Source: Paragordius varius
Taxonomy: Eukaryota > Animalia > Nematomorpha
Assembly (NCBI GenBank): GCA_964247055.1
Contig: OZ176050.1
Span: 7,006,001-7,070,000, forward strand
Direction of reading: 5' to 3'
Length of the DNA stretch: 64,000 nt
Shown: positions 16,052 to 28,088 of the stretch, piece after piece
Numbering within the stretch: the stretch's first letter is position 1
How the letters are laid out: each line of letters begins with the position of its first letter
Translations under genes and position numbers: made by a program
The notes under the pieces: generated by a model
Seen by the model: only the letters and a program-made list of their open reading frames with translations
Database searches by the model: none
Told to the model about the DNA's origin: nothing

Positions 16052-17455
16052 TCAACGTCGTCTGCCAAAAAGATAAAGATATATAAACAATTATATTGTT
16101 AATGTATTTAAAGAAAGTCTAAAAATATTTGCTAAATTGTTAATTAAAATTGTTCTTTTTAATTCATGTAATAACATAGTTATTAATATATTTTTTATTG
16201 TAACAGAATTTAAATGTCGCACCGAAATTTGTAAAATTATAAAATTCAGATTCCAATCAATGAACAAATCATAAATTAACCCATACATTTTAATTTGTAT
16301 GCCAAATATAATTTTAAAAAATATTAAGCAATCATTTTTTTGATAATCGTTTCTTATACCTTCCAACTCCATCAAATCCATTTCTACCACGGGCAGGATA
16401 TGGGCTACGGGTTCGGCTACGCCTACGATTTGAAGTCGATTGAAATGTTTCATAGGAATCCCTCCGGTCAGGATATCGATCGTAACTTTCATAATAACCA
16501 TCATCATTGTTGTATTCACGCCGGTTTTTATTATATCGCGATGGCCTATAAATAACACTTATCATTTCCTACGAAACAAACTGAAATAATTAAAACAAGC
16601 GGTGTCTCTTTTAATATAAATCGCAAGATGACTCTCTAAGAGCAGACACTGATTTTTAATTATTGTGTACATGATGCATTATCTTTTACATACAGATGAG
16701 GTGACGTTAAATGTCTTTATCAGTCTTTTGTGTATATCTTTGTCTCAAAATATGGTTATGTTATAAATCCATATCACAAATTTCAATCTTTATTATAGTT
16801 CACTAAAAGGTAGAAATCTAATAAGTTTGAGGAGTCATAAAAACATTTGTAACAGTATTAAGATAACATTTGAAAAGTATGTGTAAAAACAATCTTATTT
16901 ATTAAACCTTTCGGGTGTATAAGATCTAGAAGGCGATTGATGACGTGAACGGTCATGATGAGATGGTCTAGGCGAACGTTTCCATTTTTGCTGGGACTGA
17001 AATTCTCGCAAATCTTCTTGAGAATATCGTTTATCCTTCTTCCGCATTTGAAATGGTGCTGATAAATAAAGAATTAAATAAAAAATATGTAAAAACTTTT
17101 TCGATCACCCTGAGCAAATTCAACTTCAATCAAGCGATCTTTTATTTTTAAGGAGCGTAATTCCCGTTCAGCATCCTCGGCATCCCGCCAATCTAGATAC
17201 GTACTTATGTTAAGGAAAATTAAACAATATTATATAAACTAATTTCTAATAAAAAGGATATTGAACATAGGCAAATCCGCGTATTTCTTTGGTAAAATAA
17301 TCTCTAGGTACGTATATATCTTTCACCGGACCAAATTTTTCAAAAACTGGCCGTAAATCTTCCTCGCTAAAATTAAAGGTAAAATACTCGATTGTGGAGC
17401 TTAAATTGCGCAAATAAAGAGATACAGGGGGTTTATTGGAACGAGACATATTCAA
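16052..17455 (-). CDS. SRSF10: Serine/arginine-rich splicing factor 10/12-like (RRM plus RS domain)
   Basis: Spliced translation MSRSNKPPVSLYLRNLSSTIDEEDLRPVFEKFGPVKDIYVPRDYFTKEIRGFAYVQYLDWRDAEDAERELRSLKIKDRLIEVEFAQGDRKTPFQM matches the SRSF10 RRM without gaps. RS-rich exons lie at about 16910-17060 and 16360-16550. The last exon is uncertain (stop at 16332 or 16052). Confidence 0.9.
17201..17261 (-). other. U12-type (minor spliceosome) AT-AC intron, 61 nt
   Basis: 5' end ATATCCTTTTT, branch site TTCCTTAAC (17217-17209), then ATAAGTAC as the 3' end. Removal joins CA|G and restores FAYVQYLDWRDAEDA. Confidence 0.95.
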
Positions 17456-18454
17456 ATGGTAAACTATAAATGGTAAAGAACTGACACAAAATTATTATTT
17501 TTTTAAGTGTAATATGCAATATTCATATTAGAGTGATCAACCAGAAATTTTATTAATAAATAAAAATCCTACGATATACCAGGCCATTTAAAATTACATT
17601 TATATTTTATATAAAACATATTCTACCGAAAAAAATCATATTTAACACTTAAAACACATTTATTTCATTCGATTCGAATTGGGTTGGACACCCCAGGTTT
17701 GGTAACGAAAATACAAAAGCTATGGAATAAATTAAAACCATGGCAAAAATTTGCACTTATATAACATTTATGAACCAAAATATATAAGAAAGTTTATTCA
17801 TAAATATTAACCTATTTTAAGGTAAAACCCCATGGTAAAAATTTAGTCATCACGACATGTGTGAACTGCTAAATTAAAAAAATAAATCATTTTTTCTCTT
17901 TCTATCAATGTTAGATGTTATTTAAAAGAAAAACTAGCTTTAATATTATCCTTAAGCAAAATAAACACGATAATTGCATAAATGTTGTAAAATAAAAATG
18001 TAGAGGTACATTGATTTGGAATTTTTCACAACTGAATTATATATTTCAGCAGTTATATAATTTTTATTAGGATAAAAGCACAAATTTAAATTGGGACCGT
18101 TTCTTTTAGTAGTTTTAAAATATCAACTTAAAAATAATTTGGAGTATTTAGGTACCCCATTTCGAATCGAAGTGTCAAAGTAATAGAAAAGAATCGCTCA
18201 ATCCATTAATTGTAAATGCTAGGGCAATCAAGTCTAAATTTTTGCTGATCTGCCACAAGACAGTTTTGTGAAATGTTTTGTATTATAAGTTAATCAATGT
18301 TAATTAAACTTTTGAAATGGTTGCAATACATTTAATATTTTATAAATTTTATGTTGTACCGGTTAGGAATCGTTAAGGACCACTAATGAATCGAAGGTTA
18401 GACTTATGATACAATGCTATTTGACAAAATAAATAACCGGATGATATATATACA

Positions 18455-18910
18455 ATAGGATGTATCAGGATTATCATGTGCTTGGGTTTTGGCCGTTGAG
18501 GGATTTAGGAAAAGTAATCAGACATTTGTGGTAAGCGGTCCATATCAGAATATGGAAAATTTCCGCACATATTTTCGTTAGAAAGAATGCTTCATTTCAA
18601 AAAAATTCCATAAAATATATAAACAACATATATAGAGGAAAACAATATTTTTAAATTATTTAAATGTGGGGTCCAATAGTCCCAAATTTTTTTGCTCTTC
18701 TAAAATAAAGCAGGTTATCGTAAAATTAACACAAAAAGATTCGGATTCAGGGATAAAATATTTAAATTATGCTTAGTTGAAATCGAATAATAATATTTTT
18801 GAAAAATAAATACTTTGATTTATGAAGAAGTTATTAAAATGACTTCATACTATATTGAGGTATGATGAAAACGGTATAAAAACGCTTTAAGGTATACTAA
18901 AAACACTTTT
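18455..18910. repeat. Dispersed repeat family C; direct partner at about 59320-59760
   Basis: Collinear shared blocks atgtatcaggatta, tttgtggtaag, aaaatttcc.ca.atattt, acttcatactat.tt.gag.tatgat and acactttttc at both loci. Confidence 0.65.
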
Positions 18911-20049
18911 TCTATATCTGTAATGCTTTACATTTCTATCACCTCGGAATTCAATTAAAATACTCGTTCCTGAAATTTATTTCAAATATATATATGGTTT
19001 TTCACAAAAATTTACTAAATTTTAAAGCAAACGTACTTAAACAATTCTGATCCGATAGAGAATCATATAGAATGTTATTATAATATCTAAAGGCGTTTGT
19101 AAACTGTTTCTACGATGCCTCAAAATGGTATGATGCACGCTTCAAACAAATTTTGATTAAAATAAAATATTTAAAGAAGTACGCATTTTTAGATACCAAA
19201 ATTTACCTTATATGCAACCTTATCGTGTACTATCAGCATTTTTGCGTTTATTTCAAGGAAGTAGCCCAATTTAGATGAGCGAAAAATTGAGTGAGTGTAC
19301 ATTTATATATATTTATTGTGGTATATTTTAGAATTAAGCATTTAGTCACCAAAATAGTTTTATCTGAAAAAAGTACGCAAATTTTGTCATTTTTTATATG
19401 GACCAGTTATTAATAATAACTATCTTAAATGACTCATTAGGGCCAAATGCAAAGTCATCATAGAATTTATATACCCCATCAAGATATTTTTTATACGCCC
19501 GATTGGACACAGTGTATAATTGTAATTTGGAGTGAAGTTCTTTCATCAAAAAAATTATTAACAAAATGTGTTTAAATTTGCCATTTATATCGAGCTACCA
19601 CTAAAGTATAAATCGTAAATCATTCGTAAGGGCCAAAACCAAGAAACCTATGTGAATTAATTTTTACCAGAATTATATTTTCAGGATATTTATATATAAC
19701 CGTCGATTTTGTGCGCTATAGATGTTTTAACACCTTTATCAAAAATTTATTTAAAATAGTTACAATAATTTTGTAACTTTTCGATTCGAACCAAAACCCA
19801 AAAAGTATACTTTTGAATAGCTCGCCAAAATCGCACCATGATCCTAATATATTTTGCTATCAAAATATATATTTCTTTTGTGTGCTGTTTTTTAATTTAG
19901 CAATTATATTTTAAACAGTAGATAATTTAAAACTAATATAAATATAAAAAAGTTATTAGTGATTTAATTGTGAGCCATAATGCAAAAGCCGAATATATCA
20001 AATTATTATATTTAGAGTCAGTTGCTAATATATATTTTAACGTCCCCAT

Positions 20050-26884: not shown

Positions 26885-28088
26885 TTATGTCGTTATTTTT
26901 ATAGTATGTTTTGGACAATAATATATTTTATGAGCTTGATATGAGGATAATTTTAAAAATTTTATATCACATATATTGCAATAGGTCGTTTCATTATTGT
27001 TTGTATTATTGCTTTTATCGCTTTCTTTTGCAGTGTCAGGCGAAATAAGAGGTTTTGTAAGCTCAGAAATATTTTCAAAACTTTTGTCCACCTTAAAATT
27101 TTGTATTGTCTTAGCATTAGAAGCGATTAGGCCTGCAGAATTACCGTTTAATTCCTTATTTTTTACAATGGATGTGTTGCTATTATTTAATTTTTTTGTC
27201 GTTTTCCGCCTTTGATATGGCAATTGAGCTTTCAAATTTGGATTTAGATTAGGGTTCGATGTTTTTACTGCATATCCTTCGGGATATTTGCAATAAAATT
27301 CTTTATGGGCCGATAGATTAGGAGCAAATTTGAAAGATAACCCACATCCATCACATATGTGTTCATGTTGTTCCATAACCAAATTGTTAAAATTTGCATC
27401 TTTATATGTAATTTTGTTTAGATCTTGGCTGTGCAAAGTGCTTTTATTTGTTGTATCATTTAATTTAAGGGTATCATTATTGATTTTGGGTGCGAAACGG
27501 TTAGTTAACGGAAACCAAGGCGACATAATATACGGTACAGACGAGATCATCATCATACTGTTATTTGCGACAGTGTTTGTTAAAACCTTTTCAAACATGG
27601 TTTTATAGTAATCATAATAATTTTTTAAAAGTAGCTCAGGGTATGAAGATAAAAATGTGACTAAATTATGATTTTTATCGCCATCAAGATTGATTGGTAT
27701 GGGTGAAGTCATGTTTTTTATAACAACATTCGTTTGTTTGACCTTTTTTGATTTTCTGGGTTTTGAAAAACTTCTGGTTACACATTTTTTAGGCGAAAAA
27801 TTCACTGCTACTTTATTATTTTTATTAATTAGACAAGTTTGTTGAGTTTTGGGTTCAGTCGAGTTATTTACTATTTGCAGCAAGTTTTTGCAATAATAAT
27901 TTTGATGGCATTTAAAATTATTTAGTTGCCGAAAGCTTATCCCACATTTCTGACACTCGAATTCCTTGCCAACTTCATCGATATCTATATTCGAAAAAGA
28001 ACATCTGATTTAATACTAAACATTTGTTTGCAGAGGTTTTTGATATGCAGTGGACCCCCAAATTGATGCCGATTATGGGAAAATGCAT
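26885..28088 (-). CDS. ZFPM: Friend-of-GATA/U-shaped-like zinc-finger protein
   Basis: Three C-X2-C-X12-H-X4-C fingers in one frame: CQKCGISFRQLNNFKCHQNYYC, CDGCGLSFKFAPNLSAHKEFYC and CNICDIKFLKLSSYQAHKIYYC. The 5' end is uncertain. Confidence 0.8.

What the first reader, a model, noticed from the sequence alone, without database searches (positions are those of the whole stretch)
17201..17261. Intact miniature U12 AT-AC intron at the ancestral SRSF10 site
Perfect minor-class signals (ATATCCTTT, TTCCTTAAC, AC) in only 61 nt. The intron interrupts the Gln codon of FAYVQ in phase 2, the site where vertebrate SRSF10 has the minor intron through which the minor spliceosome controls SRSF10 levels (recalled knowledge). 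Retention reads QYPFY-stop and truncates the RRM. This implies a working minor spliceosome in a genome otherwise compacted to about 22-nt introns, and possibly a conserved sensor circuit without room for the vertebrate poison exon. Standard GT-AG gene predictors would mis-annotate this gene.
Basis: partly seen in the sequence, partly recalled or inferred. Interest (0 to 1): 0.8.

Follow-up and report, generated by a model that had tools for sequence, protein, structure and literature searches.

The report
61-base minor-class intron in SRSF10/12
A splicing-regulator gene (SRSF10/12 type) of an AT-rich animal, probably a horsehair worm, carries a textbook 61-base minor-spliceosome (U12, AT-AC) intron at the same codon as its orthologues in another horsehair worm, Trichinella, a starfish, a frog and a seahorse. 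It is a real, very small member of a known intron class, but no RNA was available to show it being spliced.

Summary
On the minus strand, 17261-17201 is a 61-nt AT-AC intron with a 9/9 U12 donor (ATATCCTTT) and a 9/9 branch site (TTCCTTAAC) 8 nt before the terminal AC. The combined pattern occurs once in the window and in 0 of 100 shuffles.

Removing it joins FAYVQ|YLDWRDAEDA without a gap. The product falls in the SRSF10/12 clade, apart from SRSF2 (100/99 support).

The "ancestral site" claim is now tested. Gordionus (818 nt), Trichinella spiralis (2092), Asterias rubens (1367), Rana SRSF12 (5043, AT-AG), Hippocampus SRSF10 (678) and two unnamed contigs (663, 112) all carry a U12-type intron at the same codon and phase. 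A further 24 public ORF fragments read FAYxQ/E-YP, the mark of ATATCC at that phase.

The window and Gordionus share 22/22 signal bases, against 64% identity at synonymous sites.

Not shown:
- Splicing itself: no RNA run holds the locus.
- Minor snRNAs and minor-specific proteins: the rest of the genome could not be searched.
- The "sensor circuit": no competing major donor is evident.

The gene probably also has 362- and 298-nt introns, so compaction is not uniform. The scan had already noted other U12 AT-AC introns elsewhere in this genome.

Verdict: new member of a known kind, moderately interesting.

The parts
17388..17449 (-). Exon 1 (ATG at 17449; MSRSNKPPVSLYLRNLSSTI-)
   Evidence: The N-terminus aligns from residue 1 with the Trichinella and vertebrate orthologues.
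17367..17387 (-). Intron 1, 21 nt, GT-AG, phase 2
   Evidence: Same position and phase as the 41-nt intron 1 of Gordionus (L001).
17262..17366 (-). Exon 2, first half of the RRM, ending ...GFAYV + CA
   Evidence: Pfam RRM_1 at E 3.9e-09 on this exon alone. 82% amino-acid identity to Gordionus exon 2.
17201..17261 (-). U12-type AT-AC intron, 61 nt, phase 2
   Evidence: Orthologous U12-type introns in 7 other loci.
17253..17261 (-). U12 donor ATATCCTTT (9/9 to consensus)
   Evidence: The first 13 intron bases are identical to those of Gordionus.
17209..17217 (-). U12 branch-point sequence TTCCTTAAC (9/9), 8 nt before the terminal AC
   Evidence: Identical 9-mer in Gordionus and in Trichinella.
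17097..17200 (-). Exon 3, second half of the RRM, (Q)YLDWRDAEDA...EFAQGDRK
   Evidence: 68% identity to Gordionus exon 3.
17059..17096 (-). Intron 3, 38 nt, GT-AG, phase 1
   Evidence: Same position as the ~6.3-kb intron 3 of Gordionus. Splicing restores GDRK-TPFQM, matching GDRKTPxQM of SRSF10/12.
16908..17058 (-). Exon 4 (linker and start of the Arg/Ser-rich tail). If the next intron is retained, the frame runs on to TAA at 16897-16895, giving a 144-aa short form.
   Evidence: Inferred.
16546..16907 (-). Probable intron 4, 362 nt, GT-AG (inferred)
   Evidence: One haplotype of run X1 carries 5 substitutions and a 1-nt deletion at 16844-16901, including a change in the TAA, as expected for non-coding sequence.
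16360..16545 (-). Probable exon 5, R/S/Y/D-rich (PSRYNKNRREY...RRRSRTRSPYPARGR...)
   Evidence: Weak low-complexity similarity to the SRYDDYDR...RSRSRS region of fish SRSF10.
16062..16359 (-). Probable intron 5, 298 nt, GT-AG (inferred)
16052..16061 (-). Probable last coding piece (-RRR, stop TGA), giving a 205-aa long form
   Evidence: Inferred. Gordionus SRSF12-like is 202 aa.

Best explanation
The 61 nt at 17261-17201 (minus strand) are a genuine U12-type (minor-class) AT-AC intron of the animal's SRSF10/12 orthologue. It was inherited at this exact codon from at least the bilaterian ancestor and has shrunk here to about the size of its own signals plus a ~35-nt spacer.

Inferred mechanism, from established knowledge of minor splicing:
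- The U11/U12 di-snRNP binds the donor ATATCCTTT and the branch site TTCCTTAAC together across the intron.
- U6atac replaces U11 at the donor, and the branch adenosine about 10 nt from the 3' end attacks.
- The exons join as GTT CA|G TAT, giving FAYVQ-YLDW, the continuous third beta-strand region of the RRM.

If the intron stays in, translation stops after QYPFY, in the middle of the RRM. The amount of functional SR protein therefore depends on minor-spliceosome activity.

Shown here: the signals, their uniqueness, the reading-frame logic, positional homology in 7 other loci, and conservation of the signals against a diverged background.

Inferred, not shown: actual excision, which spliceosome does it, and any regulatory use.
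For: 1. Signals are 9/9 and 9/9 with an AC end, unique in the window, and absent from 100 shuffles.
2. Only the AT-AC boundaries give an ungapped match to the orthologues (FAYVQ|Y.DWRDAEDA...AQGDRK). The spliced model is 68% identical to Gordionus SRSF12-like over 91 aa and about 50% identical to vertebrate SRSF12/10 over about 100 aa.
3. The tree places the model in the SRSF10/12 clade, apart from SRSF2, with 100/99 support.
4. A U12-type intron sits at the same codon and phase in Gordionus, Trichinella spiralis, Asterias rubens, Rana SRSF12, Hippocampus SRSF10 and two unnamed contigs.
5. 24 representative ORF fragments from public assemblies read FAYxQ/E-YP, which is read-through of CA/GA|ATATCC.
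6. Against Gordionus, all 22 signal bases are identical, while third codon positions of identical codons are only 32/50 identical. 0.64^22 is about 5e-5. The rest of the intron is unalignable and 13 times shorter.
7. The annotated Gordionus protein (GenBank and RefSeq entries with the same sequence) is joined exactly at AT-AC. From general knowledge, BRAKER/AUGUSTUS accept AT-AC only with an RNA-seq hint. The Gordionus paper used RNA-seq with BRAKER.
8. Literature: the SRSF10 AT-AC minor intron controls SRSF10 levels in mammals (PMC7244321).
9. The intron-bearing DNA is confirmed in an independent read set.
Against: There is no RNA evidence. No public run on record as RNA holds the locus, and three possible RNA runs of the same species label laid nothing on 5 kb around it.

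No minor snRNA gene lies in the window (Rfam gathering scan), and the rest of the genome could not be searched. The only hints of minor-spliceosome proteins (SNRNP25, ZRSR2) and of other U12 introns are unchecked notes of this scan.

An earlier follow-up in the same genome described an AT-AC intron (ARPC5) that had lost its U12 marks, so some conversion to the major pathway occurs in this lineage. The 8-nt stretch after the branch sequence is at the short end of the range seen in the orthologues (8-13 nt).
Confidence: 0.85

Rival explanations
1. Converted intron. The minor spliceosome has been lost or is being lost in this lineage, and the 61 nt are removed by the major spliceosome as a U2-type AT-AC intron, so the U12-like motifs are relics.
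For: An earlier follow-up in this genome reports an AT-AC intron in ARPC5 without U12 marks (not checked by me). Nematodes, the sister group, have largely lost minor splicing (PMC10639083). No minor snRNA was seen in the window.
Against: All U12 marks are perfect here and are identical to those of Gordionus, while synonymous sites have diverged. Relics would decay, as in the ARPC5 case. From general knowledge, U2-type AT-AC introns have a different donor (ATAAGT-like) and no TCCTTAAC close to the 3' end. The scan's readers list many further U12-type introns in this genome.
Confidence: 0.06
2. U12-type intron with another acceptor. The same donor is used with the AG at 17205-17204 (58 nt, AT-AG), which is also in frame and would give FAYV-H-T-YLDW.
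For: The 58-nt variant keeps the frame (one search lists it). The Rana SRSF12 orthologue uses AT-AG.
Against: That AG lies only 5 nt after the branch sequence, which is too close. The product would replace the invariant Gln and add a residue where all orthologues are ungapped.
Confidence: 0.04
3. Not spliced at all. The gene is decaying or produces only a truncated 60-residue peptide, and the downstream homology is a dead remnant.
For: No transcript evidence. The RS tail is short and unusual.
Against: Exons 3 and 4 remain open and conserved in the frame that only AT-AC splicing provides. Introns 1 and 3 keep intact GT-AG ends at orthologous positions. Both haplotypes are identical over 17144-17449.
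Confidence: 0.03

Closest known systems
Vertebrate SRSF10 exon-2 minor intron (Meinke et al. 2020, eLife 9:e56075; PMC7244321)
   Same: AT-AC U12-type intron in the RRM-coding part of the gene. In Hippocampus comes SRSF10 (L008) it splits the same Gln codon of FAYIQ|F in phase 2. Read-through gives an early stop.
   Different: The vertebrate intron is hundreds to thousands of nt long. It contains a competing downstream major donor, a poison exon 3 with an SRSF10-dependent enhancer, and a poly(A) site. The 61-nt intron has room for none of these, and no consensus-like major donor is present.
Gordionus sp. m RMFG-2023 SRSF12-like (XP_065317442.1 / CAK9299406.1), locus L001
   Same: Closest orthologue found (68% over 91 aa). 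All three intron positions in the RRM region are shared. The first 13 intron bases, the TTCCTTAAC and the AC end are identical.
   Different: The Gordionus introns are 41, 818 and about 6300 nt, against 21, 61 and 38 nt here.
Short minor introns of Blastocystis (Larue and Roy 2023, PMC10639083)
   Same: Minor introns that shrank together with the major introns and are mostly of the AT-AC subtype.
   Different: That is a protist with a median of 39 bp, and the survey held no nematomorph. Here an animal keeps 61 nt while major introns in the same gene are 21 and 38 nt.
Nested U12/U2 introns (Drosophila prospero; fly Urp/ZRSR2), reviewed in PMC8329584
   Same: Minor and major sites in one intron, used as a switch.
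   Different: No convincing internal major intron here. Only weak GT sites at intron positions 23 and 36, with poor acceptors.

Membership tests
U12-type (minor-class) intron, AT-AC subtype | Donor matching /ATATCCTT immediately at the exon boundary | tested here: met
   ATATCCTTT, 9/9, at 17261-17253.
U12-type (minor-class) intron, AT-AC subtype | Branch-point sequence TTCCTTRAY close to the 3' splice site, roughly 8-20 nt | tested here: met
   TTCCTTAAC, 9/9, followed by 8 nt. Orthologues have 10-13 nt, and one has 34.
U12-type (minor-class) intron, AT-AC subtype | Terminal AC paired with the AT donor, with boundaries that restore the reading frame | tested here: met
   Ends GTAC|G. The spliced frame gives an ungapped RRM.
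U12-type (minor-class) intron, AT-AC subtype | Positional homology with U12-type introns in orthologues | tested here: met
   Same codon and phase in 7 other loci from Nematomorpha, Nematoda, Echinodermata and Chordata, plus 24 read-through ORF fragments.
U12-type (minor-class) intron, AT-AC subtype | Excision seen in RNA (junction reads) | not testable with these tools
   No RNA holder. Three possible RNA runs laid nothing.
U12-type (minor-class) intron, AT-AC subtype | The genome encodes U11, U12, U4atac and U6atac and the U11/U12-specific proteins | not testable with these tools
   Only the 64-kb window can be scanned, and it has no Rfam hit. Scan notes mention SNRNP25 and ZRSR2 but are unchecked.
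SRSF10/SRSF12 SR proteins | Single N-terminal RRM | tested here: met
   Pfam RRM_1 on exon 2. Full RRM after splicing.
SRSF10/SRSF12 SR proteins | Groups with SRSF10/12 and not with SRSF2 or other SR proteins | tested here: met
   ML tree with a 100/99 split. Named best hits are SRSF12-like, SRSF12 and SRSF10.
SRSF10/SRSF12 SR proteins | Linker motif AQGDRKTPxQM after the RRM | tested here: met
   FAQGDRKTPFQM across intron 3. The SRSF2 group has ARYGRP instead.
SRSF10/SRSF12 SR proteins | Arg/Ser-rich C-terminal domain | tested here: inconclusive
   Only a modest R/S/Y/D-rich tail, which depends on two inferred introns.
SRSF10 minor/major competition module (Meinke 2020) | Competing downstream major donor inside the minor intron | tested here: not met
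   No consensus-like GT donor in the 61 nt or in the first 250 nt of the invertebrate orthologues. Present in Hippocampus as ATG|GTAAAG.
SRSF10 minor/major competition module (Meinke 2020) | Poison exon with a GA-rich SRSF10-dependent enhancer and a poly(A) site | tested here: not met
   There is no room: only 35 nt lie between the donor and the branch motifs.
SRSF10 minor/major competition module (Meinke 2020) | Protein level follows minor-spliceosome activity | not testable with these tools
   Needs an experiment. Only the early stop on retention is shown.

The most novel reading that the evidence does not exclude
In this lineage the major introns collapsed to about 21-38 nt, but U12-type introns stop shrinking near 60 nt. 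That would reveal a physical lower size limit of the animal U11/U12 di-snRNP bridge (about 35 nt between donor and branch site). The SRSF10/12 intron would then be the minimal, ancestral form of the link between the minor spliceosome and SR-protein dosage, working by plain intron retention and an early stop, without the vertebrate poison exon.
Probability: 0.3. Interest if true: 0.6.

Novelty: new member of a known kind. Interest (0 to 1): 0.42.

Why it matters
It shows that the SRSF10/12 minor intron is fixed at one codon across bilaterians, from horsehair worms to vertebrates. The dependence of this SR protein on the minor spliceosome, known from mammals, may therefore be very old.

It adds sequence-level evidence that horsehair-worm-like animals keep minor splicing. 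They are the sister group of the largely U12-less nematodes and were absent from the 2023 pan-eukaryotic survey.

It gives a natural minimal substrate of 61 nt, with 21- and 38-nt major introns in the same gene. This could be used to ask how short an animal U12 intron can be.

In practice, GT-AG-only annotation will break this gene, as it has in several public orthologue models.

Tried and rejected
- **Word search.** The 67-aa unspliced ORF (window:17249-17449:-) found no candidate, because of the length filter.
- **Protein atlas.** Returned only generic RRM clusters.
- **PDB sequence search.** Exon 3 gave nothing relevant.
- **Rfam.** The gathering scan of the window found no RNA family, and ARAGORN found no tRNA.
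- **RNA evidence.** No RNA holder. Runs X11-X13 laid nothing.
- **Tiny-intron scan.** A heuristic for tiny GT-AG introns in the window gave a flat length histogram and was dropped.
- **Other U12 introns in the window.** All 11 [AG]TATCCTT sites were examined. Only this one follows an open, conserved exon.
- **Other boundaries.** The 58-nt AT-AG and 69-nt variants, and GT-AG alternatives around the site, were rejected on frame and homology.
- **Vertebrate-style competing donor.** Not found in the invertebrate orthologues.
- **Literature.** The nematomorph genome papers held in the library do not mention introns or minor splicing. I found no figure for the shortest animal U12 intron.
- **Ostrich SRSF10.** The look-up found no record.
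- **Joined model.** The joined (spliced) protein model was never sent to a database tool. It was built from window.fa inside the sandbox and compared only with proteins already fetched.

Full report
**Observation**

On the minus strand the window holds a small gene starting at ATG 17449.

- Exon 1 is 17449-17388. Intron 1 is 17387-17367 (21 nt, GT-AG).
- Exon 2 is 17366-17262. The intron in question is 17261-17201 (61 nt).
- Exon 3 is 17200-17097. Intron 3 is 17096-17059 (38 nt, GT-AG). Exon 4 starts at 17058.

The 61-nt intron begins ATATCCTTTTT. It has TTCCTTAAC at intron positions 45-53, then 8 nt ending in AC. It splits the codon CA|G in phase 2. If it is left in, the frame reads Q-Y-P-F-Y-stop.

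The combined pattern (donor, 20-50 nt, branch site, 5-15 nt, AC) occurs once in the window, and in none of 100 dinucleotide-preserving shuffles. TTCCTTAAC itself occurs only once in both strands.

A contig of DNA run X1 reproduces 17144-17449 without a difference. The intron is therefore in the animal's DNA and is not an assembly artefact.

**What the gene is**

- Exon 2 alone hits Pfam RRM_1.
- The library-wide HMMER search with the 67-aa unspliced ORF gave, as its best single-RRM hit, P0015. Its sources name it "serine/arginine-rich splicing factor 12-like" of Gordionus sp. m RMFG-2023, a horsehair worm.
- The spliced model was built only inside the sandbox. It is 68% identical to P0015 over 91 residues and about 50% identical to vertebrate SRSF12 and SRSF10 over about 100 residues.
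- It shares the linker motif AQGDRKTPxQM. SRSF2-type proteins have ARYGRP at that place.
- A maximum-likelihood tree separates an SRSF10/12 group, including the window's model, from the SRSF2 group with 100/99 support. The nearest row is Gordionus.
- A ZFPM2/FOG-type zinc-finger ORF elsewhere in the window also points to an animal.
- Earlier agents of this scan took the genome for a horsehair worm. My result agrees only in so far as the closest available orthologue is from Gordionus. I could not name the species.

**The site is ancestral**

I fetched the genomic loci of orthologues and located the intron in each (table).

| Locus | Species and gene | Length (nt) | Ends | Branch match | nt after branch |
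|---|---|---|---|---|---|
| window | this genome | 61 | AT-AC | 9/9 | 8 |
| L001 | Gordionus SRSF12-like | 818 | AT-AC | 9/9 | 10 |
| L005 | Trichinella spiralis | 2092 | AT-AC | 9/9 | 13 |
| L006 | Asterias rubens SRSF10-like | 1367 | AT-AC | 8/9 | 12 |
| L007 | Rana temporaria SRSF12 | 5043 | AT-AG | 8/9 | 10 |
| L008 | Hippocampus comes SRSF10 | 678 | AT-AC | 7/9 | 11 |
| L003 | unnamed contig | 663 | AT-AC | 7/9 | 13 |
| L004 | unnamed contig | 112 | AT-AC | 9/9 | 34 |

- In every case the exon ends CA or GA, the intron starts ATATCC, and the next exon starts with one base followed by a Phe or Tyr codon.
- In addition, 24 cluster representatives are ORF fragments that read FAY[VI][QE]-YP. 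This is what read-through of CA/GA|ATATCC produces.
- The seahorse intron also shows a downstream ATG|GTAAAG. This fits the competing major donor described for mouse and human SRSF10 (PMC7244321; PMC8329584).

**Evidence that the signals are in use**

- Between the window and Gordionus, third positions of identical codons in exons 2 and 3 are 32/50 identical.
- The first 13 intron bases and the 9-base branch site are 22/22 identical. With 64% as a neutral yardstick this has a probability of about 5e-5.
- The rest of the intron cannot be aligned and differs 13-fold in length.
- The Gordionus protein is deposited with the exact AT-AC join in both GenBank and RefSeq. The Gordionus paper used RNA-seq with BRAKER. 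From general knowledge, that pipeline accepts AT-AC only with a transcript hint, so the orthologous junction has probably been seen in RNA there.
- For the window's own species I could not get RNA. No holder is on record as RNA, and three possible RNA runs of the same species label laid nothing on 5 kb around the gene.
- The minor snRNAs and the U11/U12-specific proteins could not be sought outside the window, and the window has no Rfam hit.
- The scan's unchecked notes list many other U12-type AT-AC introns in this genome: PHB2, RasGRP, Cav2, EIF2A and TMEM268, plus several unnamed ones of 89-110 nt. They also list a ZRSR2 and an SNRNP25 gene. These are leads, not support.

**How it most likely works**

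This part is inferred from established knowledge of minor splicing.

- The U11/U12 di-snRNP recognises the donor and branch site together across the intron.
- After exchange of U11 for U6atac, the branch adenosine about 10 nt from the end attacks the donor, and the exons join to give FAYVQ-YLDW.
- Retention gives a stop 16 nt into the intron, inside the RRM. Output of functional protein therefore depends on minor-spliceosome efficiency.
- That is as far as the "sensor" idea can be taken. The vertebrate module has a competing major donor, a poison exon with an enhancer, and a poly(A) site. None of these is present in the 61 nt, and I saw no consensus-like internal donor in the invertebrate orthologues either.
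- Weak GT sites at intron positions 23 and 36 could in principle form tiny nested major introns, but their acceptors are poor and nothing supports their use.

**Corrections to the picture**

- The gene probably does not end at the TAA after ...ERFNK (144 aa).
- A GT donor at 16907 and an acceptor before 16545 would join an in-frame R/S/Y/D-rich exon (16545-16360).
- A further 298-nt intron would then lead to -RRR-stop at 16052, giving 205 aa against 202 aa in Gordionus.
- In run X1 one haplotype carries five substitutions and a 1-nt deletion at 16844-16901. One substitution falls in that TAA and one in the Asn codon two codons before it, as expected for intron sequence.
- If this model is right, the same gene combines introns of 21, 38, 61, 298 and 362 nt. 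"Compacted to about 22 nt" therefore does not describe all introns.

**Known or new**

- The intron class, the gene family and the site are known. The orthologous AT-AC intron is already implicit in the Gordionus annotation.
- I found no paper on minor introns or intron sizes in horsehair worms.
- The pan-eukaryotic survey has no nematomorph and dropped introns under 30 bp. Its shortest minor introns are those of Blastocystis, with a median of 39 bp.
- New here are the 61-nt size in an animal, next to 21- and 38-nt major introns, and the explicit demonstration of site conservation from horsehair worm to vertebrate.
- I rate it a new member of a known kind, of moderate interest.

- The joined protein model was not sent to any database tool. 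Searches used exon or ORF references.
- P0136, a fragment whose exon-2 sequence I recall as vertebrate SRSF10/12 and which might be human, was not looked up or fetched.
- The read-laying run used 5,001 letters.

Noticed in passing
window 17639-18139 (+), with a lesser pile at 18641-18974: Contigs of DNA run X1 pile up to a summed depth of 3e5-5.6e5, against about 210-450 on the single-copy flanks, so this is a very high-copy dispersed repeat. It lies about 190 nt upstream of the SRSF10/12 start codon. 16-nt inverted arms at 17668-17683 and 18156-18171 (94% complementary) suggest a ~500-bp MITE-like element.
   Followed up: partly
window 16844-16901: One haplotype in run X1 differs by five substitutions and a 1-nt deletion within 60 nt. 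One substitution is in the TAA that would end the 144-aa short form (16896) and one is in the Asn codon two codons before it (16901). This fits a 362-nt intron 4 rather than coding sequence.
   Followed up: partly
window 16938: All X1 contigs read C where the window has T. On the gene's strand this changes CAA to CGA (Gln to Arg) in the RS-like tail, turning SRHQSPSR into SRHRSPSR.
   Followed up: no
proteins P0189, P0191-P0194, P0197-P0199, P0202-P0204 (public orthologue models): Annotated SRSF12 models of several vertebrates, and of Trichinella pseudospiralis and T. nativa, carry insertions such as FAYVQ-YPLFHFI-FEDVRD or FAYIE-YPFNYY... These are read-through of the U12 donor patched with GT-AG sites, that is, mis-annotation of this very intron.
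   Followed up: partly
proteins P0055, P0057, P0072, P0145: A few ORF fragments read FAYxQ-YL or -YV instead of -YP. Their donors are therefore not ATATCC (ATATCT-like, or a GT four bases downstream). These are possible degenerate or converted versions of the same intron in unnamed species.
   Followed up: no
L007 (Rana temporaria SRSF12): The orthologous U12-type intron there ends in AG, not AC: ATATCC ... CTCCTTAAC, 10 nt, AG. This is an AT-AG minor intron.
   Followed up: no
L004 (ENA metagenome scaffold, 28% G+C): An unnamed AT-rich eukaryote has the same intron at 112 nt, with the perfect branch motif 34 nt from the AC end. That is unusually far. A second weak branch-like stretch lies closer.
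   Followed up: no
window 26888-27883 (-): A 332-aa ORF with a ZFPM2/FOG-type CCHC finger and a C2H2 finger, which is an animal-type transcription cofactor.
   Followed up: no
proteins P0209, P0217 (Coemansia, Kickxellomycotina fungi): Fungal proteins with an SRSF10/12-like RRM and the linker ARGQRKTSREM fall in the SRSF10/12 group of the tree on a long branch. Whether they keep the intron was not examined.
   Followed up: no
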